From Selaginella moellendorffii (taxonomy: Eukaryota > Plantae > Lycopodiophyta): DNA of 64,000 nucleotides. The stretch spans positions 2,733,729-2,797,728 of the forward strand of contig NW_003314271.1 of NCBI RefSeq assembly GCF_000143415.4, given 5' to 3'. Numbering within the stretch: position 1 is the stretch's first letter; each line of letters begins with the position of its first letter. Of the stretch, positions 20,699 to 44,834 are shown one piece after another. The translations under genes were made by a program, and so were the position numbers. Below the pieces are notes generated by a model. It did not search any database, was not told the origin of the DNA, and worked only from the letters and a program-made list of their open reading frames with translations.

Positions 20699-21100
20699 TG
20701 TCATGTTTGGAAACATGACATGCACGACATCCTCCCAGACGTAGGGAAGATCTTGAGGTCGTCTCTTCCTTGGATAGAGATCAAAGCGAACTTCATCGAC
20801 CTTCTCGATCATCCCCGCCTTCCACACAATGCTCCAAAGTGAGAGGGCTTCCACTGTTGTCTGGTCTATCCGGGTCTCCCACTTTCCCTGGGCTCCGCGG
20901 GCGTAAGAATTTGAATGCATGATGAAAGAGACATCGCAATTTTGGTCGCAGTAGTGTACTATCGGGTAAACGTTTCTGCTGACTACCTTGCGAAGGATGA
21001 GATCCTGGATGTCCCATGGCAGTTCTGGGGGCAGAGGTACGCCAGGAACAGTTGCCGCGCCGAGGTTCGTAAGCTTTTTAGCGTAGATCCAGATGATCAA
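20699..21100 (-). pseudogene. Putative F-box-like gene interrupted by the copia element (3' part continues at ~17760-17868)
   Basis: LPPELPWDIQDLILRKV resembles an F-box motif; the paralogous copy at ~41450-41750 joins the two copia flanks. Confidence 0.4.
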
Positions 21101-21496
21101 TAAACAAACGTATTTTCTCTTCCCTTCTCCTAAGATTGTCTAGTCCTCGTGTATATGTTCTATGAAGTGAAAGATCACCATATTGACAAAAACTCAAGAG
21201 CTCCAGCAAACAAACCCTGCCTGGTTTGCAGTGAAATCTCAGAAAAGAAGACGAGCAAGAAAGCAGCAGCGGCAGCAGCAGCAGCCTGGTGGAAGATCTT
21301 GTAAAGTAACTTCGCGCCGATCGATCTTGTCATTTCCCTCCACGCATCCATCCCTGCATTCTCTAGCAAAAATATCTGCAGCTGTCAATCAATTCTTCCT
21401 TATGCTCGCTGCATTCCCTTGTATGTTATGGTATCTTAACGGGCTGTGGCTCACCCATTAACTTGATCCAGCCGTTGGCAGCCGTCGGATCAAGTC

Positions 21497-21660
21497 AGGT
21501 TCTCTGTGAAAATTTTACTGTTGTCAGCCACATTCTGGAGAACGTGGCTGACAGCTACCAGGTTTTAGAGAACCCACCTGCCAGCCGCCAGGTTCTGGAG
21601 AACGTGGCTGCTGTCATCCAGGTTCTAGAGAACTTGGCTGCCAGTAACCACGTTCTCCAA
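21497..21660. repeat. Subterminal 30-bp minisatellite (~5.5 copies) inside each array unit
   Basis: Period-30 CAGGTTCTGGAGAACGTGGCTG... repeats; also at ~24763, ~28030 and ~31297. Confidence 0.85.
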
Positions 21661-21683
21661 TCAGACGAGATGCAATTGCTTTT

Positions 21684-24000
21684 TTATTTTTTAATCAAAG
21701 CAAGCTTGAATAATTCAAGCTCACTTTGGCTATGACCATTGACTACAATCACATAATTACTCACAGAACAGTGGTGAAATGTGCTAGTGATCGTCGGTAG
21801 TGCTAAAGCTTTTACAGCTCTTGGATCTTTCGCAAGAGCTAAAAGTAGCTCATTGTCATCAAGATCTACCAAATAACATCAAAAGTTAGAAATAAAGAAT
21901 TCAAATCAAATAAACTTTACCTTTGTCTCCAGAAATGGATTCCTGCTGCTCGCCATGCTCCGGCACAAGCTCTGGCACAGTCTTGTGCACAATCTCGTGT
22001 TGCTTGTCGTGTCCACTTGAAACAAAGAGAAAACTAAATTGAAAGAAAAAAGGAAAGAAAGAATTTTCTTACCTTACTGCTCTTCAATCACGTCCAGAAC
22101 TTGGTGGTGATTCAGTTCCTGTTCGTGGATCTCTTCTCTTGGAGAAGGTTGTTGCTGCCCAAAACCACCTAAAATCGAGAAAAGAGAAAAGTCCATTATA
22201 AAGATTATAAAGTTTCTTACCAAAATTTTGTTGTTGCTGCTCACGATTTTGAGTCTGTTGATTGTCATTTCCACCTAAATTGAAGAGTGTTAAACCTCCA
22301 CAAAAAAAAAAGCTTTGAATTACCAAAAGAAACAAGATGGCAATCTTGAAGATCCAATAGATCTTCATTTAAAGGTTTACCAGCCTCATAGCACCGTACA
22401 ATATACTCCGATGCTTTCTGAAATTTGTCTTGGTAGTTTTTCAAACGACCAGTATGATCATACCAGTTATACAGAATAGATGACATTGCCATTCTCCTTG
22501 CTTTCCCAGAGTGATCGTACCTGTTAAAAAAAGAGGCATTAATGACAAAATGGTTAGCAAAAACCTTACTGTTCCATGTTTTCCACCCTCTTGTGTCCCA
22601 TCAGCTTCATATAGTCTTTCATTGGAGTGTTGCAAACACTCATAGTTGTAATTGCTGAATGCCGAATATCTTTCGCTGAAAGGCTCAAACCTGGAGAAAA
22701 AAAACTATGAGAAAACAAGAAAGCAGTTAGTTAATTACCTGTTTTTTTGGCAACCAATTTTACTACTTCAGAGATCTTATGCTCTCCTATCCGTGCCACT
22801 CGACAGTACCAATTATCAGTCCTGTTGAAACAGTCGTTACAAGCCAGGAAAAACGGCCGCTTGTTCAAGTCCTCCCCATCACCAACTGTTGGATGCTTAT
22901 CAAAAAAAAGCTTGAATGCCTTGTAGACTGAGGGAGCAGCTATTTCATAGAGATCCACAGCAGGCTGCTGATCCATGTTCTTACAATTCATCAGATCCAC
23001 TTCGTAGTTTTTGGAAACACGTTGGTTGAATTTGAGATAAAAAAAATTCTGATTAGAACCAATAAGAACAAAGAAAACAAATAAGAAACTACTCAATTGA
23101 ATATAGCAACCAACAACATCTTCCAAAAGTGTAAAATCAGTGAATCGCAAGTCGTACAATTCCTTCCTCCCATGTACAAGAAAGAAATTCATGCAGAATA
23201 GTAAGACTAACCGAAACAGTCCATTAGGACTGTTAGGTAGAAACTCTGGCAATGTGAGAACTGCCTTAAGCTCAGCCATCCACAAGTACACATGCTTTGA
23301 CCCTGTACTTGTTGGCCTTGTAGTTTCTAGTGTTGCTTTTCAAATTACATGGCTAGCAGCGTTCCTAGAATAAACAAACCAAACCAAACATATTAGAACA
23401 CAAACCACAACAAAAAGAACAAAAAAAGCAAGATACCTTGCTGTAAGAAACCTTGGATCATTCAGGATGTCAACTTCTTCTTCCAAAACTCCTGTTCTTG
23501 CAACTCAGGCTTCTCTTGCCAGCTTCAATACTCGGTTAAAGCAAAAAAACATATCCCTTAGAGTTGTTGGAGGGTAAGGCTTCCCATCGTCTCTCAAAAC
23601 ATGCTTGTAGAACAATGCAAGCTGGTGGGAAAGCTCCTACAGTCAGAGAAAGATGTAGTCACAAAAATCAAAAGAAAAAATAAGAAACAACCTTTGCAGG
23701 AAGTTCCTCAATCAGTCTCAGATCCTGTAAGGAAAATTCTGGGCCCTGTGCCTCGTGCCATGCATAAAACTTCTATGTTGCCTACTCATTCTTCTTTCGG
23801 GTCCCTGCTGGTATAACTAGTTTCATGGATTCTCGTCCTCCTCATTCGGAACAATTGGTCGAAAAGGTTGGCGGCCAACCTGCATCAACAAACAATTTCA
23901 ACCTGGAGTATCTAAGCAAAAAGCACTTACCTCTCTCCGACCACGCCCACCACGCCCACCACGCCCACTGCGATTCCTCCCAGGACAAACCTATCAAACT
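21684..24000 (-). pseudogene. Tyrosine recombinase (Crypton/DUF3504-like), unit 1, ~11 exons; start codon not resolved
   Basis: Spliced translation: IPAGTRKKNE*ATxKFYAW...LALFYKHVLRDDGKPYPPTTLRDMF...FLV(H/R)GRKELYDL...QRVSKNY...RPFFL...NWYCRVARIGEHKI...T|GLSLSAKDIRHSAITTM...MKLMGHKRVENMEQ|YDHS...MAMSSIL...TFHHCSVSN; internal stops. Confidence 0.85.
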
Positions 24001-24562
24001 CAAACGATTGCAAGTGAGTAAACAAGAATACATAAAAACTAGAGAACCGAATTCAAGAAAGGAGCTGCGTTCTCAACAAGATCAGCGGCATTCTGGGACA
24101 ATCCCAGATCAAATGAAGGAGGATCCATCTACAGATAGACAAAATCGAGAGGATTGAGAAGGAAAAACTATGAAATCCAGAGAAAACCAGGAAATGAGGG
24201 CAAACCAGGATTATCAGCTCTCAAGCTGCTCTCGACGCATACAAGCTCCTGCTGCCTTGAGCGCCACAAGAAACTGCTGCAAAATTCCTGAAACACACGG
24301 ACAAGGAGCAGATCTGGATCAATCTAGTTGCTATGCCTCAGATCTGACCTTGGCAAGCTGCTGCTGCCCTGCCGCTGCTGCTGACGCCTTGCCGCTACTG
24401 CTTTGTCGCTGCCATTGCCGCTTCTGAGAGAATCCGACAGCCTCACGGCGTCGGCACAAAAAACCCTAAAACCCTAGAAAACATGTTATATGTGACTTTT
24501 AGCCACGTGTTCTATGTTCATTCGACCGCTCTCATCCTCGAATAACGTTATTCCATGTGTCC

Positions 24563-24728
24563 GTTAACGGTCTCGCCACAGCTTGTTAAGGCTGTTCCCG
24601 GGCACGGGCTTGCACGTTCCCTCCAGAACGCGCTTGCCGGGCTAACGCCCGGCTCGCCCGTTCTAGGCGGGAACGTGCTCGCCCTACTTAGGAACTCCTT
24701 CTTAACGGGCTGTGGCTCGCCCGTTAAC
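24563..24728. repeat. ~165-bp GC-rich imperfect palindrome spanning the unit junction (also 27829-27994 and ~31096-31261)
   Basis: Centre GCCGGGC-TAAC-GCCCGGC; paired blocks GCACGTTCCC/GGGAACGTGC, GTTCCCGGG/CCCGGGAAC (intact at junction 2) and GCCACAGCCCGTTAAG/CTTAACGGGCTGTGGC (consensus of copies). Confidence 0.9.
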
Positions 24729-24949
24729 TTGATCCAGCCGTTGGCAGCCGTCGGATCAAGTCAAGCTCTCTACGAGAATTTTACTGTTGTCAGCCACATT
24801 CTGGAGAACGTGGTTGACAGCTACCAAATTCTCGAGAACCCACCTGCCAGCCGCCAGGTTCTGGAGAACGTGGCTGCTGTCATCCAGGTTCTAGAGAACT
24901 TGGCTGCCAGTAACCACGTTCTCCAATCAGACGAGATGCAATTGCTTTT

Positions 24950-27265
24950 TTATTTTTTAATCAAAGCAAGCTTGAATAATTCAAGCTCACTTTGGCTATG
25001 ACCATTGACTACAATCACATAATTACTCACAGAACAGTGGTGAAATGTGCTAGTGATCGTTGGTAGTGCTAAAGCTTTTACAGCTCTTGGATCTTTCGCA
25101 AGAGCTAAAAGTAGCTCATTGTCATCAAGATCTACCAAATAACATCAAAAGTTAGAAATAAAGAATTCAAATCAAATAAACTTTAACTTTGTCTCTAGAA
25201 ATGGATTCCTGCTGCTCGCCATGCTCCAGCATAGGCTCTGGCATAGTCTCGTGCACAGTCTCGTGTTGCTTGTCGTGTCCACCTGAAACGAAGAAAAAAC
25301 TAAATTGAAAGACAAAAGGAAAGAAAGAATTTTCTTACCTTACTGCTCTTCAATCACGTCCAGAACTTGGTGGTGATTCAGTTCCTTTTCGTGGATCTCT
25401 TCTCTTGGAGAAGGCTGTTGCTGCCCAGAACCACCTAAAATCGAGAAAAGAGAAAAGTCCATTATAAAGATTATAAAGTTTCTTACCAAAATTTTGTTGT
25501 TGCTGCTCACGATTTTGAGTCTGTTGATTGTCATTTCCACCTGAATTGAAGAGTGTTAAACCTCCACAAAAAAAAAAAGCTTTGAATTACCAAAAGAAAC
25601 AAGATGGCAATCTGGAAGATCCAATGGATCTTCATTTAAAGGTTTACCAGCCTCATAGCACCATACAATATACTCCGATGCTTTCCGAAATTTGTCTTGG
25701 TAGTTTTTCAAACGACCAGTATGATCATACCGGTTATACAGAATAGATGACATTGCCATTCTCCTTGCTTTCCCAGAGTGATCGTACCTGTTAAAAAAAG
25801 AGGCATTAATGACAAAATGGTTAGCAAAAACCTTACTGTTCCATGTTTTCCACCCTCTTGTGTCCCATCAGCTTCATATAGTCTTTCATTGGAGTGTTGC
25901 AAACACTCATAGTTGTAATTGCTGAATGCCGAATATCTTTCGCTGAAAGGCTCAAACCTGGAGAAAAAAAACTATGAGAAAACAAGAAAGCAGTTAGTTA
26001 ATTACCTGTTTTTTCGGCAACCAATTTTACTACTTCAGAGATCTTATGCTCTCCTATCCGTGCCACTCGACAGTACCAATTATCAGTCCTGTTGAAACAG
26101 TCGTTACAAGCCAGGAAAAACGGTCGCTTGTTCAAGCCCCCCCATCACCAACTGCTGGATGCTTATTAGAAAAAAGCTTGAATGCCTTGTAGACTAAGGG
26201 AGCAGCTATTTCATAGAGATCCACAGCAGGCTGCTGATCCATGTTCTTACAATTCATCAGATCCACTTCGTAGTTTTTGGAAACACGTTGGTTGAATTTG
26301 AGACAAAAAAAATTCTGATTAGAACCAATAAGAACAAAGAAAAAAAAAAAGAAACTACTCAACTGAATATAGCAACCAACAACATCTTCCAAAAGTGTAA
26401 AATCAGTGAATCGCCTGTCGTACAATTCCTTCCTCCCATGTACAAGAAAGAAATTCATGCAGAATAGTAAGACTAACCGAAACAGTCCATTAGGACTGTT
26501 AGGTAGAAACTCTGGCAATGTGAGAACTGCCTTAAGCTCAGCCATCCACAAGTACACATGCTTTGACCCTGTACTTGTTGGCCTTGTAGTTTCTAGTGTT
26601 GCTTTTCAAATTACATGGCTAGCAGCGTTCCTAGAATAAACAAACCAAACCAAACATATTAGAACACAAACCACAACAAAAAGAACAAAAAAAGCAAGAT
26701 ACCTTGCTGTAAGAAACCTTGGATCATTCAGGATGTCAACTTCTTCTTCCAAAACTCCTGTTCTTGCAACTCAGGCTTCTCTTGCCAGCTTCAATACTCG
26801 GTTAAAGCAAAAAAACATATCCCTTAGAGTTGTTGGAGGGTAAGGCTTCCCATCGTCTCTCAAAACATGCTTGTAGAACAATGCAAGCTGGTGGGAAAGC
26901 TCCTACAGTCAGAGAAAGATGTAGTCACAAAAATCAAAAGAAAAAATAAGAAACAACCTTTGCAGGAAGTTCCTCAATCAGTCTCAGATCTTGTAAGGAC
27001 AATTCTGGGCCCTGTGCCTCGTGCCATGCATAAAACTTCAATGTTGCCTACTCATTCTTCTTTCGGGTCCCTGCTGGTATAACCAGTTTCAATGGATTCT
27101 CGTCCTCCTCATTCGGAACAATTGGTCGAAAAGGTTGGCGGCCAACCTGCATCAACAAACAATTTCAACATGGAGTATCTAAGCAAAAAGCACTTACCTC
27201 TCTCCGACCACGCCGACCACGCCCACCACGCCCACTGCGATTCCTCCCAGGACAAACCTATCAAA
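24950..27265 (-). pseudogene. Tyrosine recombinase (Crypton-like), unit 2
   Basis: Same exons as unit 1; additional 1-bp deletion at GDGGA* and a mutated splice donor. Confidence 0.85.
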
Positions 27266-28215
27266 CTCAAACGATTGCAAGTGAGTAAACAAGAATACAT
27301 AAAAACTAGAGAACCGAATTCAAGAAAGGAGCTGCGTTCTCAACAAGATCAGCGGCATTCTGGGACAATCCCAGATCAAATGAAGGAGGATCCATCTACA
27401 GATAGACAAAATCGAGAGGATTGAGAAGGAAAAACTATGAAATCCAGAGAAAACCAAGAAATGAGGGCAAACCAGGATTATCAGCTCTCAAGCTGCTCTC
27501 GACGCACACAAGCTCCTGCTGCCTTGAGCGCCACAAGAAACTATTGCAAAATTCCTGAAACACACGGACAAGGAGCAGATCTGGATCAATCTAGCTGCTA
27601 TGCCTCAGATCTGACCTTGGCAAGCTGCTGCTGCCCTGCCGCTGCTGCTGACGCCTTGCCGCTACTGCTTTGCCGCTGCCACTGCCACTTCTGAGAGAAT
27701 CCGACAGCCTCACGACGTCGGCACAAAAACCCTTAAAACCTAGAAAACATGTTATATATGACTTTTAGCCACGTGTTCTATGTTCATTCGACCGCTCTCA
27801 TCCTCGAATAACGTTATTCCATGTGTCCGTTAACAGTCTTGCCACAGCCTGTTAAGGCCGTTCCCGGGCACGGGCTTGCACGTTCCCTCCAGAACGCACT
27901 CGTCGGGCTAACGCCCGGCTCGCCCGTTCTGGGCGGGAACGTGCTCGCCCTACCCGGGAACTCCTTCTTAACGGGCTGTGGCTCGCCCGTTAACTTCATC
28001 CAGCCGTTGGTAGCTGTCGGATCAAGTCAAGCTCTCTGCGAGAATTTTACTATTGTCAGCCACATTCTGGAGAACGTGGCTGACAGCTACCAGATTCTAG
28101 AGAACCCACCTGCCAGCTGCCAGGTTCTGGAGAACCTGGCTGCTGTCATCCAGGTTCTAGAGAACTTGGCTGCCAGTAACCACGTTCTCCAATCAGACGA
28201 GATGCAATTGCTTTT

Positions 28216-30530
28216 TTATTTTTTAATCAAAGCAAGCTTGAATAATTCAAGCTCACTTTGGCTATGACCATTGACTACAATCACATAATTACTCACAGAA
28301 CAGTGGTGAAATGTGCTAGTGATCGTCGGTAGTGCTAAAGCTTTTGCAGCTCTTGCATCTTTCACAAGAGCTAAAAGTAGCTCATTGTCGTCAAGATCTA
28401 CCAAATAACATCAAAAGTTAGAAATAAAGAATTCAAATCAAATAAACTTTACCTTTGTCTCCAGAAATGGATTCCTACTGCTCGCCATGCTCCGGCACAA
28501 GCTCTGGCACAGTCTCGTGCACAGTCTCATGTTGCTTGTCGTGTCCACTTGAAACAAAGAGAAAACTAAATTGAAAGAAAAAAGGAAAGAAAGAATTTTC
28601 TTACCTTACTGCTCTTCAATCACATCCAGAACTTGGTGGTGATTCAGTTCCTGTTCGTGGATCTCTTCTCTTGGAGAAGGCTGTTGCTGCCCAGAACCAC
28701 ATAAAATCGAGAAAAGAGAAAAGTCCATTATAAAGATTATAAAGTTTCTTACCAAAATTTTGTTGTTGCTGCTCACGATTTTGAGTCTGTTGATTGTCAT
28801 TTCCACCTAAATTGAAGAGTGTTAAACCTCCACAAAAAAAAAAAGCTTTGAATTACCAAAAGAAACAAGATGGCAATCTTGAAGATCCAATGGATCTTCA
28901 TTTAAAGGTTTACCAGCCTCATAGCACCATACAATATACTCCGATGCTTTCCGAAATTTGTCCTGGTAGTTTTTCAAACGACCAGTACGATCATACCGGT
29001 TATACAGAATAGATGACATCGCCATTCTCCTTGCTTTCCCAGAGTGATCGTACCTGTTAAAAAAAGAGGCATTAATGACAAAATGGTTAGCAAAAACCTT
29101 ATTGTTCCATGTTTTCCACCCTCTTGTGTCCCATCAGCTTCATATAGTCTTTCATTGGAGTGTTGCAAACACTCATAGTTGTAATTGCTAAATGCCGAAT
29201 ATCTTTCGCTGAAAGGCTCAAACCTGGAGAAAAAAAACTATGAGAAAACAAGAAAGCAATTAGTTAACTACCTGTTTTTTCGGCAACCAATTTTACTACT
29301 TCAGAGATCTTATGCTCTCCTATCCGTGCCACTCGACAGTACCAATTATCAGTCCTGTTGAAACAGTCGTTACAAGCCAGGAAAAACGGTCGCTTGTTCA
29401 AGCCCCCCCATCACCAACTGCTGGATGCTTATTAGAAAAAAGCTTGAATGACTTGTAGACTAAGGGAGCAGCTATTTCATAGAGATCCACAGCAGGCTGC
29501 TGATCCATGTTCTTACAATTCATCAGATCCACTTCGTAGTTTTTGGAAACACGTTGGTTGAATTTGAGACAAAAAAAATTCTGATTAGAACCGACAAGAA
29601 CAAAGAAAACAAATAAGAAACTACTCAACTGGATATAGCAACCAACAACATCTTCCAAAAGTGTAAAATCAGTGAATCGCAAGTCATACAATTCCTTCCT
29701 CCCACGTACAAGAAAGAAATTCATGCAGAATAGTACAACTAACCAAAACAGTCCATTAGGACTGTTAGGTAGAAACTCTGGCAACGTGAGAATTGCCTTA
29801 AGCTCAGCCATCGACAAGTACACATGCTTTGACCCTGTACTTGTTGGCCTTGTAGTTTCTAGTGCTGCTTTTCGAATTACATGGCTAGCAGTGTTCCTAG
29901 AATAAACAAACCAAACCAAACATATTAGAACACAAACCACAACAAAAAGAACAAAAAAGGCAAGATACCTTGCTGTAAGAAACCTTGGATCATTCAGGAT
30001 GTCAACTTCTTCTTCCAAAACTCCTGTTCTTGCAACTCAGGCTTCTCTTGCCAGCTTCAATACTCGGTTAAAGCAAAAAAACATATCCCTCAGAGTTGTT
30101 GGAGGGTAAGGCTTCCCATCGTCGCTCAAAACATGCTTGTAGAACAATGCAAGCTGGTGGGAAAGCTCCTACAGTTAGAGAAAGATTTAGTCATAAAAAT
30201 CAAAAGAAAAAATAAGAAACAACCTTTGCAGGAATTTCCTCAATCAGTCTCAAATCCTGTAAGGTAAATTCTGGGCCCTGTGCCTCGTGCCATGCATAAA
30301 ACTTCGATGTTGCCTACTCATTCTTCTTTCGGGTCCCTGTTGGTATAACCAGTTTCAATGGATTCTCGTCCTCCTCATTCGGAACAATTGGTCAAAAAGG
30401 TTGGCGGCCAACCTGCATCAACAAACAATTTCAACATGGAGTATCTAAGCAAAAAGCACTTACCTCTCTCCGACCATGCCGACCACGCCCACCACGCTCG
30501 CTGCGATTCCTCCCAGGACAAACCTATCAA
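28216..30530 (-). pseudogene. Tyrosine recombinase (Crypton-like), unit 3
   Basis: Same exons; retains the catalytic-Arg motif FLVRGRKE; stops and a frameshift present. Confidence 0.85.
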
Positions 30531-33315
30531 ACTCAAACGATTGCAAGTGAGTTAGCAAGAATACATAAAAACTAGAGAACCGAATTCAAGAAAGGAGCTG
30601 CGTTCTCAACAAGATCAGGGGCATTCTGGGACAATCCCAAATCAAATGAAGGAGGATCCATCTACAGATAGACAAAATCGAGAGGATTGAGAAGGAAAAA
30701 CTATGAAATCCAGAGAAAACCAGGAAATGAGGGCAAACCAGGATTATCAGCTCTCAAGCTGCTCTCGACGCATACAAGCTCCTGCTGCCTTGAGCGCCAC
30801 AAGAAACTGCTGCAAAATTCCTGAAACACACGGACAAGGAGCAGATCTGGATCAATCTAGTTGCTATGCCTCAGATCTGACCTTGGCAAGCTGCTGCTGC
30901 CCTACCGCTGCTGCTGACACCTTGCCGCTACTGCTTTGCCGCTACCACTGCCACTTCTGAGAGAATCCGACAGCCTCACGGCGTCGGCACAAAAAACCCT
31001 AAAACCCTAGAAAACATGTTATATATGACTTTTAGCCACGTGTTCTATGTTCATTCGACCGCTCTCATCCTCGAATAACGTTATTCCATGTGTCCGTTAA
31101 CGGTCTCGCCACAGCTTGTTAAGGCTGTTCCCGGGCACGGGCTTGCACGTTCCCTCCAGAACGCGCTCGCCGGGCTAATGCCCGGCTCGCCCGTTCTAGG
31201 CGGGAACGTGCTCACCCTACTTAGGAACTCCTTCTTAACGGGCTGTGGCTCGCCCGTTAACTTGATCCAGCCGTTGGCAGCCGTCGGATCAAGTCAAGCT
31301 CTCTGCGAGAATTTTACTGTTGTCAGCCACATTCTGGAGAACGTGGCTGACAGGTACCAGATTCTAGAGAACCCACCTGCCAGCCGCCAGGTTCTGGAGA
31401 ACGTGGCTGCTGTCATCTAGGTTCTAGAGAACTTGGCTGCCAGTAACCACGTTCTCCAATCAGACGAGATGCAATTGCTTTTTTATTTTTTAATCAAAGT
31501 AAGCTTGAATAATTCAAGCTCACTTTGGCTATGACCATTGACTACAATCACACAATTACTCACAGAACAGTGGTGAAATGTGCTAGTGATCGTCGGTAGT
31601 GCTAAAGCTTTTGCAGCTCTTGGATCTTTCGCAAGAGCTAAAAGTAGCTCATTGTTGTCAAGATCTACCAAATAACATCAAAAGTTAGAAATAAAGAATT
31701 CAAATCAAATAAACTTTAACTTTGTCTCCAGAAATGGATTCCTGCTGCTCGCCATGCTCCGGCATAGGCTCTGGCATAGTCTCGTGCACAGTCTCGTGTT
31801 GCTTGTCGTGTCCACCTGAAACGAAGAAAAAACTAAATTGAAAGAAAAAAGGAAAGAAAGAATTTTCTTACCTTTCTGCTCTTCAATCACGTCCAGAACT
31901 TGGTGGTGATTCAGTTCCTGTTCGTGGATCTCTTCTCTTGGAGAAGGCTGTTGCTGCCCAGAACCACCTAAAATCGAGAAAAGAGAAAAGTCCATTATAA
32001 AGATTATAAAGTTTCTTACCAAAATTTTGTTGTTGCTGCTCACGATTTTGAGTCTGTTGATTGTCATTTCCACCTGAATTGAAGAGTGTTAAACCTACAC
32101 AAAAAAAAAAAGCTTTGAATTACCAAAAGAAACAAGATGGCAATCTTGAAGATCCAATGGATCTTCATTTAAAGGTTTACCAGCATCATAGCACCATACA
32201 ATATACTCCGATACTTTCCGAAATTTGTCCTGGTAGTTTTTCAAACGACCAGTATGATCATACCGGTTATACAGAATAGATGACATTGCCATTCTCCTTG
32301 CTTTCCCAGAGTGATCGTACCTGTTAAAAAAAGAGGCATTAATGACAAAATGGTTAGCAAAAACCTTACTGTTCCATGTTTTCCACCCTCTTGTGTCCCA
32401 TCAGCTTCATATAGTCTTTCATTGGAGTGTTGCAAACACTCATAGTTGTAATTGCTAAATGCCGAATATCTTTCGCTGAAAGGCTCAAACCTGGAGAAAA
32501 AAAACTATGAGAAAACAAGAAAGCAATTAATTAACTACTTGTTTTTACAGCAACCAATTTTACTACTTTAGAGATCTTATGCTCTCCTATCCGTGCCCTT
32601 TGACAGTACCAATTATCAGCCTGTTGAAACAGTCGTTACAAGCCAGGAAAAACGGCCGCTTGTTCAAGCCCCCCCATCACCAACTGCTGGATGCTTATCG
32701 AAAAAAAGCTTGAATGCCTTGTAGACTAAGAGAGCAGCTATTTCATAGAGATCCACAGCAGGCCGCCGATCCATGTTCTTACAATTCATCAGATCCACTT
32801 GGTAGTTTTTGGAAACACGTTGGTTGAATCTTGTCAGGAATCCCCCAATTCTTGCCACATTCTTGACTCTTGCCGGATTCCTGACCTGCAGACCACATTC
32901 CTGACTCTCGAGACACTTCCCTATTCCTGACTCTCGAGACACTTCCCTATTCCTGACTCTCGAGACACTTCCCGATTCCTGAGTCTCAAGCCACATTCCT
33001 GATGATGATGTGGTGCCTCCTCGACCTCAGCTATATTTAGGCCATCCTCGATCCAAGAGTGGTGGAGCTTCATCAACCTATAGTATATATAGGTTAGCCT
33101 TGTTCTATTTCTCCACAATCTGAATCAACGCCAGTATATGGCCTTTTCTTTGTTTTCACTAGCTTTTTCTCTTTGTCTTTAGCATTTTCCAGCCTTGATC
33201 TTGTTGGGGGTCTTGACAGTTTGATTCAGATTGTGGTTTTTGCTTTTCTTTTAGCTCGTTTTGATTATTTGATTGCCTTTGTCTTTTTCCCCCTTTCTTT
33301 TCTTTCTTCTTGCCA

Positions 33316-34288
33316 ATGGAGTCTCCAAGCCATCCTGATTTCTTTGCTGAAGTCCTTGCAAAAATCCAATCTGAGAATACCGAGCTGAAGGCGACCCTTC
33401 TTCGCATGCAGCAGGAGCTTGCTTCACTTTCGGCTCAAGGATCCAGCAAAGTTCCTGAACCGAAGGTGAGTTTCCCGGCGAAATTTTCAGGCAAGCGTTT
33501 GGAGCTTCGTGGATTTTTGAACCAAATGGAGCTGATCTTTGCACTTCAACATCGGCGGTACCCCACTCCCGAGTCTCAAATCGGCGCGATTGGGACGTTG
33601 CTTGAGGGTGCAGCTTTGTCATGGTTTTCTCCTCTTCTGGAGAAGAGCATGAAAGGGGTTGTGGTTCCGGAGCTAATGGATCTTCAATTGTTCAAAGAGA
33701 AGCTCGAAACATGTTTTGGCAAGATGGATCGGGTTCGGGCTGCTACCACAAAGATGAGACGTCTCTCTCAGGGGTCTTGTCCTGCCTCGATCTACGCTGC
33801 AGAGTTCCAACTCCTTGCCTTGGACACTCAGTGGGATGAGCGGGCCCTGATTGACCAATTTCGTTTCAGCCTCAACAACGGTGTCAAGGATTTGTTGCTC
33901 ACCATGGAGGATCCCAAGGACCTGTCGGATGCCATCAACAAAGCTGTTTGATGTGACAATCGTCTCTTTGAACATCGTTAGGAAAGTCGCCGCGCCGCTG
34001 TTTTTTCCGTCCCAGACTCAGGAATCCCAGCTTGAGTCTTCGGGGCATACTCCTAAACCTACTGCTCCGGTTCCGATGGATATTTCTGGTACTCCCCGAC
34101 TCATTAGAGGGAAGTTGAGTCCTGCTGAGAAGCAACGTCGAATATCTCATAATCTTTGCCTCTATTGTGCTGATCCTAATCACAAAGCAACTGTATGTCC
34201 CAAGAAGCCTCCTCGACTGCTCGAGTTCACTCTGCCTCAAAGTCCACCTCTATTGCAGTCGGGAAACGACCCTGTCCAAACAGAGTAG
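33316..34288 (+). pseudogene. gag: gag (PEG10/sushi-like capsid plus CCHC knuckle), with internal stops and a frameshift
   Basis: PEPKVSFPAKFSGKRLELRGFLNQ, LEGAALSWF, LSQGSCPASIYAAEF, CLYCADPNHKATVC; stop at 33951. Confidence 0.9.
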
Positions 34289-37200
34289 GAGTTGTCTGTT
34301 TGGACTCCCCGAATAAAAATCACTTTTCTTCTTTATCAAGCTCCTCACCACCTTTCATCAAAGCCACCACCAATTCCCGCAACTTCCGCGTCCCATGTCT
34401 CCTTTCTTTCACCGGACAATCAGGACTCAAGGCTCTGGTGTTACTGGACTCGGGTGCAACTTCCTGCTTCATGGACACGGCCTTTGCTGCCCGACATCAC
34501 ATTCCTCTTTCTCCTACCATACGGGATTTGAGGGTTGAAGGCATCGGCGGGCATTTTGTGTCTCCATCTTCTGGACTTAGGGAAACGTTGCCCGTTCAAG
34601 TACACATCGGGTCCACCGTCACCGATATCGGCTTCAACATCATCAACAGCAAGTCCTCCTCTATGGTGCTCGGTCTTCCTTGGTTCCAACTACATCAGCC
34701 TCAAATTTGTTAGAAGGAATTATAGCTCATCTCTCCTACGGCTTCCCCTACTGTTCATCGAGTCCGAATCAGGAAAAGTTCCCTAAACTCAAATCGGGGT
34801 TCTGTTCTTGACTCTATAAAGTTTTCACCCTCTTCTTTTTCCTCTCTTCCATCTTACACTGGACCGTATCCTCGTCTCATCATTCCATTTAGTCGTATGC
34901 CTCCTCCTATCTCCACAATCACTATGAAAGAACTTCTTGATGAAGTACCTCTTTTTCTTTTTGCTTTACATGTTTTTCCTATCAGTCTTCCTGAGAAGTA
35001 TCATGATTTTGGGGATGTGTTTGACAAGAAAAAAGCTAGTGTACTGCCTGTTCATCGGCCTTATGATTGTCCCATTGATTTACAGGAAGGAGCGTCACCT
35101 CCGTGGGGGCCTATCTACGGGTTATCCCCGTCCGAGCTTAAGGCCCTCAAAGAGTACGTGGATGAGAACCTTGCCTCGGGCTACATTCAGCATTCGCAGT
35201 CCCCGACTGGAGCGCCTGTCTTCTTTGTCAAGAAGAAGGATGGGAGCTTGCGGCTAGTCATCGACTACCGAAGTTTGAACAAGATGACTGTTCGGAACCG
35301 TTATCCGCTGCCCCTGATCTCGGACCTGTTGGAACGTCTCGGCGGTGCCCGCTTCTTCACCAAGATCGACCTCCGTGGAGCATACAACCTGATCCGGATC
35401 CGGCCTGGTGATGAATGGAAGACTGCGTTCCGAACCCGCTATGGCCACTTCGAGTACACTGTCATGCCATTTGGCTTGACAAATGCTCCAGCAGTTTTCC
35501 AACACATGGCGAACGACATCTTTCGGGAGTTTCTTGATCAGATGGTGATCGTCTACCTCGATGACATCCTCATCTACTCAAAAACTCAGGAGGAGCATGA
35601 CGAACATGTACGCAAGGTGCTAGCGAAGCTGCGAGAACATGGCCTATACGCGAAGCTTGAGAAATGTTCCTTTGATCAGCAGTCTGTGGAGTTCCTTGGG
35701 TACATTGTCACTCCTGAGGGTATCACGATGGATCCTGCCAAAGTCAAGACTATTCTCGAATGGGAGCCTCCACAATCAATGTCAGACGTTCAGGTTTTCC
35801 TTGGCTTCGCCAACTTCTACCGCAAATTCATTGATCACTACTCTGACATTATCCTTCCTCTCACACATCTCACTCGCAAGGATGTTCCCTTCTCTTCGTC
35901 TGCTGCTGCCCAGCAGGCCTTCGACACACTCAAGGCGGCCTTCAGTTCTGCTCCTATCTTGATCCATGCTGATTCCTCACAACCTTTCTTCATCGAGGCT
36001 GACGCCTCCGACTTTGCCATTGGTGCTGTGCTGTCTCAACTCGGAGCGGATCACGAACTTCATCCGGTCGCTTTCCATTCTCGGAAATTCCAGCCTGCGG
36101 AGATCAATTACGAAATCCACAACAAGGAGCTCCTTGCCATCGTGGATTCCTTTGGAGAGTGGCACCGTTTCTTGGAGGGGGCAAGCCATCAAACAACAGT
36201 CTGGACGGATCACAAAAATCTCGAGTACTTTGCCACTTCCCGAGTTTTAAGCCATCGTCAAGCAAGGTGGGCACAATTCCTAAGTCGGTTTGACTTTGTT
36301 ATCAAGTACAGATCTGGAAAGTTTCAAGGCCTTTCTGATGCTCTTTCAAGGCGCTCCTATCTCAGTCTCAGGCCTGGTAATCCTGCCTTCGATCAACAGG
36401 ATCAAGTTATTGTCGGTCCTGATCAGCTTCAAGTTATGGCAATTTCCCTGGCCCCTCAGGACTCCTCCTTGATGGATGCAATCAGAAACGATCTTCAATC
36501 CGATGATCTCGCTAGCGATATTTTCCCCCATCTTCAGGCTGGACACCCAGTGACTCCCGACTGCTGGTGATTTGACGAGTTCAAGTTCTTAGATGGTTTA
36601 TTGTACCGTGGGGAGCAGCTTTACATTCCTGAAGGTGATGCTCGAAGGTTGGTCCTGATGGCGTGCCACAATAGCCCGACTACTGGTCACTTCGGCATTG
36701 CGAAAACCTATGAGCTAGTTGCACAGGACTTTTGGTGGCCTCACATGGACGACTACATCAAAGCTTTTGTTACCTCCTGTGACACTTGTGCCCGGAATAA
36801 GGTACCTCACCACCTTCCTTCAGGTTTGCTTCGTTCCCTTCCGGTCCCTTCAGGTCCTTGGGAATCCATCTCCATGGATTTCTTGAGTGATCTTCCGAGT
36901 TCTGGAGGCTTCAACAGCATTTTAGTCGTGGTGGATCGCTTCACAAAGATGGCGCACTTCTTGCCATGTACCAAGGAGTTTTCGGGCGAGGACATGGCAA
37001 AACTGGTATTCAGGGAAATTTTCCGACTTCATGGGATTCCTACAGATGTGGTTTCGGATCGAGGGCCTCAGTTCATCTCTCATTTCTGGCAACGGTTTTT
37101 GCAGCTGCTTGGAGTGAAGGCCAACCTCTCTTCGGCATATCATCCTCAAACTGATGGGCAGTCCGAGCGAACGATTCAGACGTTAGAACAATTCTTGAGG

Positions 37201-38019
37201 TGCTTCATCAACTATCATCAGGATAACTGGTTCGATATCCTTCCTCTTGCTGAGTTCTCCTATAACAACTCTGTTCACTCCTCTCTTCGAGTTTCCCCCT
37301 TCTTTGCAAACTCTGGCCAAAATCCCCGATTCAATCTCTCACTTCCTTCTCCATCTGAATCCTCTCGTTCAAATCCCCACTCTGAGGCATTTATCTCCAA
37401 CCTCCAGGAAATCCACAACTCCATCTCCTTCCACCTCCATCGTGCTCAGGAATCTCATAAAACATTTGCCAATGTCCATCGTCAGGATTGTCCCCTTTAC
37501 AATATCGGGGATAAAGTCTGGCTCCTCAGGCGAAATATCTCCACCACCAGGCCCTGTCCAAAACTCGATTTCAAACGCCTTGGTCCTTTCCCTATCACTG
37601 CCATCATTAATCCTGTCACTTATCGCCTTGCACTTCCCTCCTCATATCAAATTCACCCCGTTTTTCACTCCTCTCTCCTTGAGCCTTATATTCCCAGTCC
37701 TATTCCAAATCGGGTCATTCCTCCGCCTCCACCAGTGCAGCTCGAGGATGGGTCTGAGTACGAGGTTCAGGACATCCTTGATTCCAAGATTTCATGGTCT
37801 AAACTCTACTATCTGGTGGACTGGAAGGGTTACGGACCTGAGGAACGCACTTGGGAACTTGCGGACAACCTGATTCATTCTCCTGACCTTGTTCAGGACT
37901 TCCACCGCCGCTATCCTTCTCGTCCCAGTCCTCATTCTTTTTCTCCATCTCCCATCCCTCATCGCTCATCTCATCCTCCTCTTCGTTCTCGTTCACATCC
38001 TCGTTCCACTCGTTCTTGA
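34261..38019 (+). pseudogene. pol: pol polyprotein (protease, RT, RNase H, integrase, chromodomain), broken by stops at 34713 and 36570
   Basis: LLDSGAT; VMPFGLTNAP, VYLDDILIYS; EADASDFAIGAVL; H-x6-H...CDTC, SMDF, VSDRGPQF, GQSER; chromodomain EYEVQDILDS...YYLVDWKGYGPEERTWE. Confidence 0.95.
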
Positions 38020-40834
38020 GAAGGGGGTGCTGTCAGGAATCCCCCAATTCTTGCCACATTCTTGACTCTTGCCGGATTCCTGGCTTGCAAACCACATTCC
38101 TGACTCTCGAGACACTTCCCTATTCCTGACTCTCGAGACACTTCCCGATTCCTCAGTCTCGAGCCACATTCCTAATGATGATGTGGCGCCTCCTCAACCT
38201 CAGCTATATTTAGGCCATCCTCGATCCAAGAGTGGTGGAGCTTCATCAACCTATAGTATATATAGGTTAGCCTTATTCCATTTCTCCACAATCTGAATCA
38301 ACGCCAGTCTAAGGCCTCTTCTTTATTTTCACTAGCTTTTTCTCTTTGTCTTTAGCATTTTCCAGCCTTGATCTTGTTGGGGGTCTTGACAAATCTGAGA
38401 CAAAAAAAATTCTGATTAGAACCGACAAGAACAAAGAAAACAAATAAGAAACTACTCAACTGGATATAGCAACCAACAACATCTTCCAAAAGTGTAAAAT
38501 CAGTGAATTGCAAGTCATACAATTCCTTCCTCCCACGTACAAGAAAGAAATTCATGCAGAATAGTACAACTAACCAAAACAGTCCATTAGGACTGTTAGG
38601 TAGAAACTCTGGCAACGTGAGAATTGCCTTAAGCTCAGCCATCGACAAGTACACATGCTTTGACCCTGTACTTGTTGGCCTTGTAGTTTCTAGTGCTGTT
38701 TTTCGAATTACATGGCTAGCAGTGTTCCTAGAATAAACAAACCAAACCAAACATATTAGAACACAAACCACAACAAAAAGAACAAAAAAGGCAAGATACC
38801 TTGCTATAAGAAACCTTAAATCATTCAGGATGTCAACTTCTTCTTCTAAAACTCTTGTTCTTGCAACTCGGGCTTCTCTTGCCAGCTTCAATACTCGGTT
38901 AAAGCAAAAAAACATATCCCTCAGAGTTGTTGGAGGGTAAGGCTTCCCATCGTCTCTCAAAACATGCTTGTAGAACAATGCAAGCTGGTGGGAAAGCTCC
39001 TACAGTCAGAGAAAGATGTAGTCACAAAAATCAAAAGAAAAAATAAGAAACAACCTTTGCAGGAAGTTCCTCAATCAGTCTCAGATCCTGTAAGGAAAAT
39101 TCTGGGCCCTGTGCCTCGTGCCATGCATAAAACTTCGATGTTGCCTACTCATACTTCTTTCAGGTCCCTGCTGGTATAACCAGTTCCAATGGATTCTCAT
39201 CCTCCTCATTCGAACAATTGGTTGAAAAGGTTGGCGGCCAACCTGCATCAACAAACAATTTCAACCTGGAGTATCTAAGCAAAAAGCACTTACCTCTCTC
39301 CGACCACGCCGACCACGCCCACCACGCCCACTGCGATTCCTCCCAGGACAAACCTATCAAACTCAAATGATTGCAAGTGAGTAAACAAGAATACATAAAA
39401 ACTAGAGAACCAAATTCAAGAAAGGAGCTGCGTTCTCAACAAGATCAGTGGCATTCTGGGACAATCCCAGATCAAATGAAGGAGGATCCATCTACAGATA
39501 GACAAAATCGAGAGGATTGAGAAGGAAAAACTATGAAATTCAAAGAAAACCAGGAAATGAGGGCAAACCGGGATTATTAGCTCTCAAGCTGCTCTCGACG
39601 CACACAAGCTCCTGCTGCCTTCAGCACCACAAGAAACTGCTGCAAAATTCCTGAAACACACGGACAAGGAGCAGATCTGGAGCAATCTAGCTGCTATGCC
39701 TCAGATCTGACCTTGGCAAGCTGCTGCTGTCCTGCCGCTGCTGCTGACGCCTTGCCGCTACTGCTTTGCCGCTGCCGCTGCCGCTTCCGAGAGAATCTGA
39801 CAGCCTCACAGCGTCGGCACAAAAAACCCTAAAACCCTAGAAAACATGTTATATATGACTTTTAGCCACGTGTTCTATGTTCATTCGACCTCTCTCATCC
39901 TCGAATAACGTTATTCCATGTGTCCGTTAACGGTCTTGCCACAGCCCGTTAAGGCTGTTCCCGGGCACGGGCTCGCACGTTCCCTCCAGAATGTGCTTGC
40001 CGGGCTTACGCCCGGCTTGCCTGTTCTGGGCAGGAACGTGCTCGCCCTACCCAGGAACTCCTTCGTCGTCGATAGACCATCATTTCTCGCTGTTTTTCGG
40101 TGAGATATTTCGAATAAAAATATCTCACTGTTGCAGGATATTTTGAATTAACTGCTAGGATGAGGCGATCGTCTCGCCCCTCGATCGATGCATATCGGTC
40201 ATGCGTTCGTCTAGCTCATCGGTCAACCCAAGCTAGAGATCTTTAGCTGCCTTTCCGAGCATATCTATAGTGTGCATTTCTGGCAATGACGTGACTCCAC
40301 CAAGCGCTCTAATCTTTCTTCCTGGATCATCGCTTCATCGATCATGACTGTCGTGTTTTTGGCCATTATAGATTATAGAAGGACGAGGACACTAAGCAGG
40401 AGCCGCAGCCTCCCAATGTTCCTGAGGGAAGCGCCAGCGCCAGCACCGTCCGGCGAATCGCAGCAGCCAGAAGCCAATGAAGCCGAGAAGAATCCCCCAG
40501 ATTGGTTCAAGCGAGAGATAAGAAAAAGGTGAGAACTCCTCTATTTTCTTTGTTCATGGTCTTGTTCTTGTTCTTCTTCACCGTGGAAACTTTCCAGGCT
40601 AGACACAAATGGGAAATCCTCTTCTTGCTGACGACGAGTTGATCGACCGCCTCTCAGATTCCATCTCTTCCTCCTCGCCCTCACTGTTGAGCGTAACTTT
40701 GAGATATCCTTCCGCCATTTTCTTCAGAGAACGACAATGGCCCTTGAGAATGAAGGAAAACGATGAAAGGCTTAGAAACTTTTGTTTTCGTTTCGCAATC
40801 AAATTCGCACACGGAGATGCTTTCTTTCCACTTC

Positions 40835-41449: not shown

Positions 41450-41755
41450 CTATGCTGTCGCTGGCATAAGCCACAATTCATCAAAGTCGGAATCCCGGTA
41501 AGATTGCTGGTGTCATGTTTGGAAACAAGAATCCAAGGGAAGATCGTGGGGCCATCTCTCCCGTGGATAGAGGTTAAAGGAACTTCATCATCATCCTTGC
41601 CTTCCACGGAATGCTCCATTGCGAGAGGAATTCTATTGTTGTCTGGTCTATCCGGGTTAGACCAGACTCCCACGTTCCCTGGGCTCTGTGAGAATTGGAA
41701 TCCATGATGAATGAGACATCGCGATCTTGGGCGCGATGGTGTGTTATCCAACAAG
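41450..41755 (-). pseudogene. Degenerate paralog of the F-box-like gene lacking the copia insertion
   Basis: Colinear with 17805-17868 joined directly to 20699-20945. Confidence 0.7.
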
Positions 41756-44225: not shown

Positions 44226-44830
44226 TCAAAATGCATACCCATGCACGGCGAGCTGGACAGAGTAGAGGTCCAGGCAGAAGGCAGGCGGTGCCGCAGCAGG
44301 AACATCGTTGCCGAAAAACTACGAGGACAGCAACGGGACCGTGTACCGCGGCATCCATGGTTGCACACAAATTTCATCCATGCTCTCCACACCGCTCCAG
44401 CGCTCGGGATTTCCAGGCTTAAATCCCGCGACTTGAAGCGTAGTGTCGGTGACTGTCTGGAGGTACTCCGCGTGAGGTCCAAAAGAGTAACCGTAGCGGG
44501 GTGCGGGTGCTCCATTCGCATCTCTCTCGCAAACGACACACAGCATGCGGTCCGGGCTGTGATCCCATAGCTTCAATCCTATGGAAAAGTTCACCGTGGG
44601 CGAGTTCCGAATGAAGTCCGTGCAGCGCCTTAGAAGACCGCTAAGTGACTGAGAATCAGAGACTTCGCAGATGCCAGCCGGGGCAGCTGCCCGCCTACCA
44701 TTCGGATTCACCTTGTAAAAGAGCACGTCAGGCTCCTTTCTTGTGTTGGGAGGGCGCAAAGTTTCCACTGTTGTGGCGAATGGTCTTGAGACGATCTTGA
44801 AGCCATGCGAAATCTCCCTGGCTACCCACT
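44226..44830 (-). pseudogene. Uma2-like PD-(D/E)xK restriction-endonuclease-fold gene with premature stop
   Basis: RKEPDVLF...ICEVSDSQSLSGL...FSIGLKLW...SFG; reading past the TAG at 44319 gives FCLDLYSV, matching LDLYSI in 47294-48184. Confidence 0.6.
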
Positions 44831-44834
44831 GGTG

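What the first reader, a model, noticed from the sequence alone, without database searches (positions are those of the whole stretch)
21434..40064. Crypton-like tyrosine-recombinase DNA transposon in a land-plant genome, present as an exact tetramer
Seen: each 3.27-kb unit has a ~11-exon minus-strand gene that the ORF track breaks into meaningless pieces. Spliced, it reads IPAGTRKK..W(*)A..KF.AW...FYKHVLRDDGKPYPPTTL..., then R (VRGRKE), K (VSKN), KxxR (SAKDIRHSAIT), H-x8-Y (MGHKRVENMEQ|Y), then Y..S...MSSIL and a FHHCSVSNC tail. Established: this is the R-K-(H)xxR-H-Y tyrosine-recombinase active site, and the RxDGxxYxPxTL and RGxE segments are typical of Crypton/DUF3504 (ZMYM/QRICH1/KCTD1-type) recombinases. 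No RT is present in the unit, so it is not DIRS. Cryptons are known to me mainly from fungi, animals, stramenopiles and green algae. Inference: a lycophyte or other land-plant family may be undescribed.
Basis: partly seen in the sequence, partly recalled or inferred. Interest (0 to 1): 0.93.

Follow-up and report, generated by a model that had tools for sequence, protein, structure and literature searches.

The report
Decayed recombinase transposon array in Selaginella
Four tandem, mutation-riddled copies of a 3.27-kb element that once encoded a tyrosine recombinase sit in the spikemoss Selaginella moellendorffii; it is best read as a dead Crypton-type DNA transposon, a kind that the land-plant literature I could search does not list.

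Summary
The repeat is real but not as described. There are four head-to-tail units of 3,265-3,267 bp (21434-40064). They are 96.2-97.7% identical, not exact. The fourth is split by a 5.56-kb Ty3/gypsy element.

Each unit carries one minus-strand gene of about 12 exons and roughly 600 codons. Its product is a tyrosine recombinase: it matches Pfam PF00589, and a family profile hits only Xer/integrase chains in the PDB, with K-x-x-R, H and Y aligned on the catalytic residues. The unit holds no reverse transcriptase.

The organism is Selaginella moellendorffii. A fifth, truncated copy on another scaffold ends within one nucleotide of the array's end, next to a 9-8-9 bp palindrome. That argues for site-specific mobility.

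All copies are dead. They share a TAG at a conserved Trp, and each has further stops, frameshifts, or a mutated catalytic Arg. Substitutions are spread evenly over codon positions, and 62% are C>T or G>A.

Links to DUF3504 and QRICH1 (CryptonA-derived domains) recur but stay below Pfam thresholds. Distant relatives exist only in unnamed contigs.

Verdict: a decayed Crypton-like element that was amplified in place after it was inactivated. It is probably a new lineage for land plants. I could not check Repbase/Dfam or the full genome copy number.

The parts
21434..40064 (-). Whole tandem array: four units plus the nested LTR retrotransposon, bracketed by the dinucleotide TC at both ends
21434..24699 (-). 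Unit 1. Gene 24128-21684 on the minus strand. Exons: 24128-24048, 23990-23931, 23879-23692, 23636-23437, 23364-~23100, ~23049-22739, 22690-22570, 22520-22381, 22295-22221, 22168-22078, 22015-21921, 21865-21684. Lesions: 1-nt deletion in exon 3, TAG at the conserved Trp (within 23776-23787), a second TAG, TGA within 23500-23513, TGA within 23337-23348, and catalytic Arg changed to His (VHGRKE).
24700..27965 (-). Unit 2. Gene 27395-24950. Lesions: TAG at the Trp, two TGA stops, Arg to His, and a 1-nt deletion in the exon that carries the SKN lysine.
27966..31232 (-). Unit 3. Gene 30661-28216. Lesions: TAG at the Trp, one TGA stop, a 1-nt deletion in the SKN exon, and a stop in exon 11. The catalytic Arg is retained (VRGRKE).
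31233..32831 (-). Unit 4, gene-3' part (exons from SKN to the stop codon at 31483)
38397..40062 (-). Unit 4, gene-5' part (ATG at 39491). Lesions: extra TGA (GT*KK), TAG at the Trp, and 1-nt deletions.
32832..38391 (+). Nested Ty3/gypsy chromovirus, not part of the element. LTRs at 32832-33218 and 38031-38391, 96.1% identical. Encodes gag, protease, RT-RNase H and integrase-chromodomain. TSD AATCT at 32827-32831 and 38392-38396.
24702..24727 (.). Site B: a 26-bp palindrome with 9-bp arms (TTAACGGGC / GCCCGTTAA) and an 8-bp spacer, directly inside the unit boundary. Also at 21436-21461, 27968-27993 and 31235-31260. Candidate recombinase site.
   Evidence: the same site ends the copy in L001
24564..24589 (.). 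Site A: an inverted twin of site B (spacer reversed), 110 bp before the unit boundary. Also at 27830-27855, 31097-31122 and 39927-39952.
24793..24925 (.). Subterminal 30-bp repeats containing GTTCTNNAGAAC palindromes, downstream of the gene's stop codon. The equivalent stretch is present in every unit (for example 21527-21660).

Best explanation
The array is the remains of a Crypton-type DNA transposon of Selaginella moellendorffii. The element is 3.27 kb and its only gene encoded a tyrosine recombinase of about 600 residues.

Shown:
- The protein belongs to the tyrosine-recombinase superfamily.
- The unit has no RT, LTRs or TIRs.
- The element has a nucleotide-precise end, used at two unrelated loci, that abuts a 9-8-9 bp palindrome.
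- All copies are pseudogenes decaying neutrally with a C>T bias.

Inferred:
- The active element was excised as a circle. Its recombinase re-inserted it by site-specific breakage and joining beside the palindrome, leaving only 1-2 bp of junction homology.
- The four-unit array arose from one copy that was already defective, because all units share the same TAG. It then grew by unequal crossing-over, or by trans-mobilised or multimeric circles.
- Afterwards the units exchanged segments by gene conversion, were silenced and methylated, and one was hit by an LTR retrotransposon.
For: Recombinase identity:
- PF00589 scores 42.6 bits (E=7e-11) on the array's annotated product P0001, which UniRef names 'Tyr recombinase domain-containing protein'.
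- The relative P0007 scores 30.4 bits, above the cut-off of 27.1.
- A profile of the K-to-Y half hits only XerC-like, XerA, integrase and IntI4 chains in the PDB. K-x-x-R aligns on H-x-x-R, GH on GH and Y on Y.
- Arg-Gly-x-x-Glu, Ser-Lys-Asn, K-x-x-R, His and Tyr are conserved across the family.

No other enzyme:
- Other ORFs of the unit have no credible Pfam hit.
- The flanks hold only an unrelated copia RT fragment.

Mobility:
- Locus L001, on a different scaffold, holds unit positions 2-2338 at 95.5% identity. Its homology stops within one nucleotide of the array's outer end.
- Its flank is unrelated to the unit.

Site:
- The 26-bp palindrome occurs 8 times against 0.01 expected.

Death and neutrality:
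- Shared and private stops and frameshifts are tabulated.
- Differences between units are spread evenly over codon positions (for example 27/19/17), and coding divergence is about equal to non-coding divergence.
- 93 of 149 singleton changes are C>T or G>A.

Mosaicism: the 2:2 informative sites cluster by position along the unit.

Crypton-A flavour: weak DUF3504 and QRICH1-domain hits recur in independent family members at the same profile positions, and no other family recurs.
Against: - Only two loci are known, and only one element end is confirmed at the second locus. The other end there is truncated.
- The terminal direct repeat is 1-2 bp, not the 4-6 bp reported for Cryptons (PMC3212892).
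- Twelve exons is more typical of a host gene than of a transposon.
- DUF3504 and QRICH1 hits are all below Pfam's thresholds.
- An exhaustive phmmer search of 1.84 billion representatives found no described Crypton or DUF3504 protein.
- Structure models were too poor to confirm the fold.
- The relatives in other organisms look like old, diverged paralogues under purifying selection rather than recent transposon copies.
Confidence: 0.65

Rival explanations
1. A host, formerly domesticated, recombinase-derived gene that was tandemly duplicated by unequal crossing-over and then died. It would not be a mobile element.
For: - About 12 exons with short GT-AG introns, like ordinary Selaginella genes.
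- Very low copy number among annotated proteins.
- The shared TAG shows the units were copied in place after inactivation.
- Relatives elsewhere are similar only in coding sequence (66-69% nt), and differences fall mainly at third codon positions (29/15/87), as for genes under selection.
Against: - The copy on another scaffold ends within one nucleotide of the array's end, beside the palindrome, with unrelated flanks. A random segmental duplication would not do this.
- No intact copy is seen in Selaginella.
- The relatives carry their own premature stops, and one is split by a pogo element in TE-rich DNA.
Confidence: 0.15
2. A chromosomally integrated multimer of a small circular, plasmid-like replicon that encoded a recombinase and carried a pair of inverted sites, loosely analogous to the yeast 2-micron circle.
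For: - The array holds an exact integer number of units.
- Two inverted 26-bp sites lie 138 bp apart and straddle the circle junction.
- The unit is only 3.27 kb with a single gene.
Against: - No replication or partition gene is present.
- A second, single, truncated chromosomal copy exists.
- The units differ by 2-4% and share inactivating mutations, so there is no evidence that an episome ever existed.
- This overlaps with the circular intermediate of the Crypton model.
Confidence: 0.07
3. An internally deleted remnant of a DIRS/Ngaro-type tyrosine-recombinase retrotransposon that lost its RT.
For: - These elements also encode a tyrosine recombinase and use circular intermediates.
- The unit has inverted repeats near the junction.
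Against: - There is no RT, RNase H or methyltransferase remnant in any frame of the unit.
- There are no split direct repeats and no ITR/ICR layout.
- The weak domain affinities are to DUF3504 and QRICH1, which are Crypton-derived.
- A review states that DIRS is unknown in land plants (PMC9033089).
Confidence: 0.03

Closest known systems
CryptonA elements and their DUF3504/QRICH1-domain derivatives (animal Cryptons, ZMYM2-4, QRICH1; Glomhopper in Glomeromycota)
   Same: - A single recombinase gene, with no RT and no TIRs.
- An N-terminal helical segment of the 'DG-x-x-Y-P-x-x-(T/S)' type, followed by R-G-x-x-E.
- Weak but recurrent Pfam hits to PF25561 and PF12012 at consistent profile positions.
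- Introns are present, as in some Glomhoppers (PMC13465315).
   Different: - All hits are below the gathering thresholds (at most 15.8 bits against 29.7 and 30.8).
- No described member was found by any search.
- The host is a lycophyte, whereas DUF3504 is described as widespread in Opisthokonta (PMC13465315).
- Lys replaces the first His of H-x-x-R.
- There is a long N-terminal extension with a conserved PSFDLG motif.
Fungal and oomycete Cryptons (CryptonF, CryptonS; Goodwin 2003; Kojima and Jurka 2011, PMC3212892)
   Same: A small, low-copy, recombinase-only DNA element with no terminal inverted or long direct repeats. It is thought to move as a circle. The coding region has introns.
   Different: - Those elements have 4-6 bp terminal direct repeats (for example TATGG). 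Here only 1-2 bp are shared at the junctions.
- There is no GCR1_C or Ulp1 protease domain.
- Here a 9-8-9 bp palindrome and its inverted twin lie at the junction, and the element forms a tandem array.
DIRS1/Ngaro/PAT tyrosine-recombinase retrotransposons
   Same: They encode a recombinase of the same superfamily, use circular intermediates, and have inverted repeats near the junction.
   Different: There is no RT, RNase H or methyltransferase, and no split direct repeats or ITR/ICR.
Prokaryotic and phage tyrosine recombinases (XerA/XerC, Cre, integron IntI)
   Same: - The best sequence matches among solved structures, with catalytic K/H-x-x-R, H and Y aligned.
- The candidate site has the classic layout of two inverted arms around an 8-bp spacer.
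   Different: - Only the C-terminal 70-100 residues align.
- The integration junction lies at the outer edge of the palindrome, not inside its spacer.
- The gene is eukaryotic and has many exons.

Membership tests
Tyrosine recombinase superfamily (Pfam PF00589, clan CL0382) | Significant match to the catalytic-domain model | tested here: met
   P0001, the array's annotated product, scores 42.6 bits against a cut-off of 27.1, summed over two units. The relative P0007 scores 30.4 bits. A single spliced unit (P0001:1086-1401) scores 24.4 bits, E=2.9e-5, just under the cut-off.
Tyrosine recombinase superfamily (Pfam PF00589, clan CL0382) | Catalytic residues Arg I, Lys, His/Lys-x-x-Arg II, His and the Tyr nucleophile in order | tested here: met
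   The family alignments show R-G-x-x-E, S-K-N, K-x-x-R, G-H and (R/Q)-Y. The PDB profile alignment puts R, H and Y on those of XerC-like 4a8e. Copies 1 and 2 have Arg I mutated to His.
Tyrosine recombinase superfamily (Pfam PF00589, clan CL0382) | Integrase fold shown by structure comparison | tested here: inconclusive
   The AlphaFold2 models had mean pLDDT of 49 and 54. Foldseek gave no hit with E<=0.001, although Cre, Tre and XerA head both lists.
Crypton (recombinase-only DNA transposon) | The element encodes a tyrosine recombinase and no reverse transcriptase | tested here: met
   The only RTs nearby belong to a nested gypsy element with its own TSD, and to a copia fragment outside the array.
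Crypton (recombinase-only DNA transposon) | No TIRs or LTRs, and short (4-6 bp) direct repeats at the termini | tested here: inconclusive
   There are no long terminal repeats. The junctions share only TC at the array and C at L001.
Crypton (recombinase-only DNA transposon) | Mobility: copies at unrelated loci with identical termini | tested here: inconclusive
   One extra locus (L001) has the same gene-3' terminus to within 1 nt. Its other end is truncated. The whole genome could not be searched.
Crypton (recombinase-only DNA transposon) | The recombinase groups with Crypton clades in a phylogeny | not testable with these tools
   No reference Crypton, DIRS or Ngaro sequences could be obtained.
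DUF3504 (PF12012) / QRICH1 domain (PF25561), i.e. the CryptonA lineage | Pfam match at or above the gathering score | tested here: not met
   PF12012: 15.7 bits (E=0.016) for the window piece, 14.6 bits for L016 exon 1, and best E=0.0059 among 16 members. PF25561: 15.8 bits (E=0.015), and 5 of 16 members at E<=1. The cut-offs are 29.7 and 30.8 bits.
DIRS/Ngaro retrotransposons | RT/RNase H (with or without methyltransferase) in the same unit, plus ITR/ICR or split direct repeats | tested here: not met

The most novel reading that the evidence does not exclude
This could be the first recognised representative of a plant lineage of tyrosine-recombinase DNA transposons, effectively a new Crypton group. 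Under this reading:
- its distant relatives sit in several other, probably non-seed-plant, genomes;
- its recombination site is identifiable as a 9-8-9 bp palindrome paired with an inverted twin across the circle junction;
- its tandem array records recombinase-mediated integration of circles or multimers.

That would give Cryptons, whose sites and intermediates are still hypothetical, a defined protein-site pair to test.
Probability: 0.2. Interest if true: 0.75.

Novelty: new member of a known kind. Interest (0 to 1): 0.5.

Why it matters
Transposons that encode a tyrosine recombinase are treated as absent from land plants in the reviews I could read. A 2022 land-plant TE review states that DIRS occurs only in green algae and does not mention Cryptons at all. 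DUF3504 recombinases are described as an opisthokont family. A Crypton-like element in a lycophyte, with relatives in other unnamed contigs that are probably from plants, would widen the known host range of this rare transposon class.

The element also has a clear palindromic candidate site next to a nucleotide-precise end. That gives a concrete protein-DNA pair for testing the circle-and-recombine model proposed for Cryptons.

The importance is limited for three reasons. All copies here are dead. The copy number appears to be tiny. An existing Repbase/Dfam entry could not be excluded.

Tried and rejected
- Tandem Repeats Finder does not see the array, because the period exceeds 500. The repeat finder and blastn do.
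- Rfam found nothing in the window.
- phmmer with the 202-aa piece against 1.84 billion representatives gave only three hits: two Selaginella annotations and one Logan protein. No DUF3504 or Crypton protein appeared.
- Three word-indexed searches found only the same small family and no annotated or Pfam-labelled relative. They used P0002, a profile of the catalytic half, and a profile of the N-terminal half.
- The AlphaFold2 models of both halves were of low confidence, and the Foldseek results were not significant.
- The N-terminal profile has no PDB sequence hit.
- I looked for comparable palindromes in the relatives' loci and found none.
- I looked for an empty site or paralogous flank and found none, only a 132-bp stretch at 75% identity on both sides of the array.
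- I looked for the source organisms of the relatives through accession numbers in the literature and found none.
- The public annotation P0001 (1,401 aa) is a mis-fusion across several units, with several wrong splice choices. I used only its correctly spliced C-terminal stretch.
- The exon 5/exon 6 junction (the intron between the Arg I exon and the SKN exon) could not be fixed. The 66-nt T-rich insert is in frame and has no canonical GT in the right phase.
- The weak Rcd1 hit of a plus-strand ORF over the 30-bp repeats was judged to be a repeat artefact.
Full report
WHAT IS THERE

The window is nuclear DNA of the lycophyte Selaginella moellendorffii. The 1,401-aa protein that matches the region almost exactly is GenBank EFJ30854.1 (SELMODRAFT_409570) on a 3.09-Mb scaffold. 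UniRef names it 'Tyr recombinase domain-containing protein'. Intronless PPR-DYW genes elsewhere in the window fit this origin.

Between 21434 and 40064 lie four head-to-tail units of 3,265-3,267 bp. They are not exact copies: pairwise identity is 96.2-97.7%. The fourth unit is interrupted by a 5,560-bp Ty3/gypsy chromovirus at 32832-38391. That element has a 5-bp target duplication (AATCT), encodes gag, protease, RT-RNase H and integrase-chromodomain, and has LTRs that are 96.1% identical. The LTR divergence (3.9%) is as large as the divergence between units, so the array is old.

THE GENE

Each unit carries one minus-strand gene of about 12 exons and roughly 600 codons. The introns are short (about 48-87 nt) and GT-AG.

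In unit 1 the gene runs from the ATG at 24128 to the stop at 21684. Units 2-4 show that the exon with IPAGTRKK continues upstream in frame. The apparent ATG at 23826 in unit 1 is created by a 1-nt deletion. The first exon's PSFDLG motif is conserved in distant relatives, which supports the upstream exons.

One junction, between the exon with the first catalytic Arg and the exon with Ser-Lys-Asn, could not be fixed. The 66-nt T-rich insert is in frame, but it lacks a GT in the right phase in all five copies.

The public annotation fuses several units and mis-splices them.

IDENTITY OF THE PROTEIN

- Pfam PF00589 (phage integrase family) scores 42.6 bits (E=7e-11) on P0001, over two units. A single correctly spliced unit scores 24.4 bits.
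- The relative P0007 scores 30.4 bits, above the cut-off.
- A profile of the family's K-to-Y half, searched against all PDB sequences, hits only tyrosine recombinases: XerC-like 4a8e at E=1.3e-4, then XerA, an integrase and IntI4. The family's K-x-x-R aligns on H-x-x-R, G-H on G-H, and Tyr on the nucleophile.
- Alignments show R-G-x-x-E, S-K-N, K-x-x-R, H and Y conserved.
- The structure test was inconclusive. The AlphaFold2 models reached only pLDDT 49 and 54. Foldseek gave no significant match, although Cre, Tre and XerA lead both lists.

Nothing else in the unit has a credible domain, and there is no RT. A copia RT fragment lies 2 kb outside the array.

ALL COPIES ARE DEAD

- All four units share a TAG at a conserved Trp.
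- Units 1-3 share a TGA. Units 1-2 share a further TGA and have the catalytic Arg changed to His.
- Units 2-4 share a 1-nt deletion in the SKN exon.
- Units 1, 3 and 4 each have private stops or frameshifts. Unit 4 also took the LTR insertion at the start of that exon.
- Differences between units fall equally on the three codon positions (for example 27/19/17). Coding divergence is about equal to non-coding divergence.
- 93 of 149 singleton changes are C>T or G>A, the signature of deaminated methyl-cytosine.
- The 2:2 informative sites cluster by position: units 1+2 group together in the middle of the unit, and units 1+3 group together at its ends. The units have therefore exchanged segments.

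The shared TAG means the array was built from a copy that was already defective.

ENDS AND SITES

The array is an integer number of units bracketed by TC. Directly inside the boundary lies a 26-bp palindrome with 9-bp arms and an 8-bp spacer (site B). An inverted twin (site A) lies 110 bp before the boundary. Together they occur 8 times, against 0.01 expected. Downstream of the stop codon there are 30-bp repeats with GTTCTNNAGAAC palindromes, 8 matches against 0.13 expected.

The layout of two arms around an 8-bp spacer is that of classic tyrosine-recombinase sites (PMC3212892). However, the junction sits at the outer edge of site B, not in its spacer. A role for the site is therefore inferred, not shown.

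EVIDENCE FOR MOBILITY

A second annotated protein (EFJ08823.1) led to locus L001 on another scaffold. L001 holds unit positions 2-2338 at 95.5% identity. At one end it is truncated against a different repeat. At the other end it stops, to within one nucleotide, where the array stops, just outside site B. The flank beyond that point is unrelated to the unit.

A random segmental duplication would not reproduce this boundary, so a site-specific joining event is the simplest reading. This is the only such locus I could reach. No tool here can search the Selaginella genome.

RELATIVES

An exhaustive phmmer search and three indexed searches found only a small family in unnamed Logan, ENA and JGI contigs. 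These contigs are probably from plants, since one carries a zf-RVT LINE fragment.

The relatives have a gene of about 800 codons. In the copies where the structure can be read (L002, L016) it has two exons, with the same motifs plus a conserved C-terminal coiled-coil-like segment. They share an intron in roughly the same place as one Selaginella intron.

L002 and L016 each have a single premature stop, and another copy is split by a pogo element. Between L002 and L016, differences fall mostly at third codon positions (29/15/87 and 26/13/73), so the protein was under selection for most of their divergence.

Three loci from the same metagenome samples are only 66-69% identical, and only in coding sequence. 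In those organisms, therefore, there is no evidence of recent transposition.

COMPARISON WITH KNOWN FAMILIES

The element meets the operational definition of a Crypton in that it is recombinase-only, has no RT, and has no TIRs or LTRs. It meets the mobility and short-terminal-repeat criteria only partly (PMC3212892, PMC8969392).

An affinity to the CryptonA-derived domains is suggested by weak hits that recur at the same profile positions in independent members:
- DUF3504: E=0.016, 0.036 and 0.0059.
- QRICH1 domain: E=0.015, 0.14, and 5 of 16 members.
- No other family recurs.

None of these hits reaches Pfam's thresholds, so membership of DUF3504 is not established. DIRS/Ngaro membership fails on the absence of RT and of their repeat architecture.

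NOVELTY

In the literature I could search, a 2022 review of land-plant TEs omits Cryptons and states that DIRS is known only from green algae. DUF3504 is described as widespread in Opisthokonta. No paper links Cryptons or tyrosine-recombinase transposons to Selaginella. Automated plant TE databases do carry uncurated 'Crypton' labels.

Repbase and Dfam could not be checked.

Noticed in passing
window 3732-7541 (+), 7650-10148 (-), 15620-17590 (-): Three long intronless pentatricopeptide-repeat genes. The second ends in the DYW motif (…CSCGDYW). This is typical of the expanded RNA-editing factor family of Selaginella.
   Followed up: no
window 32832-38391: A Ty3/gypsy chromovirus with long open gag, protease, RT-RNase H and integrase-chromodomain ORFs. 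It has a TG…CA LTR pair at 96.1% identity and a 5-bp TSD (AATCT), and is nested in unit 4.
   Followed up: partly
window 24555-25001 (+), and the same stretch in each unit: A plus-strand ORF that is continuous only across the unit junction. It reads through the 30-bp repeats (…VLEN… periodicity) and gives a sub-threshold Rcd1/CNOT9 hit (E=1.3e-5, 25 bits against 37.7). This is probably a repeat artefact. Exon 1 of the relative L016 gave an equally weak Not1 hit.
   Followed up: no
window 61693-62361, 63407-63732, 63744-64000; L001 9108-9786 and 20123-20379: Another dispersed repeat family shared between the window and the second Selaginella locus (79-96% identity). In L001 it directly abuts the truncation point of the recombinase element.
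   Followed up: no
window 19021-19404 (+): A Ty1/copia reverse-transcriptase fragment (RVT_2, E=9.6e-9) 2 kb outside the array.
   Followed up: no
window 20841-20963 and 41623-41748: A 132-bp stretch at 75% identity, in the same orientation on both sides of the array. It may be an older repeat into which the array was inserted.
   Followed up: no
window 44836-45215: A short tandem array with a period of 103-113 bp, 3.7 copies, 82-89% matches.
   Followed up: no
L002 2650-2810; L016 1940-2100; proteins P0005-P0011: The relatives share a strongly conserved C-terminal segment (…LVEEEM(R/Q)FWS…G(T/I)(R/I)(F/L)AMQ(K/R)… followed by a heptad-like stretch). I saw nothing like it in the Selaginella protein. 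Its function is unknown.
   Followed up: no
L003, L017, L019 (JGI samples 33000568xx, 3300059835): Three diverged paralogous recombinase loci recur, each with constant neighbours, across many metagenome samples. This suggests one abundant eukaryote, possibly a plant host, whose identity I could not establish.
   Followed up: partly
window 49366-50691 (-): A 441-aa ORF with a weak aminoglycoside-phosphotransferase/kinase-like hit (PF01636, E=0.001). Neighbouring ORFs of unknown family (47294-48184, 44319-44894) have no Pfam match.
   Followed up: no
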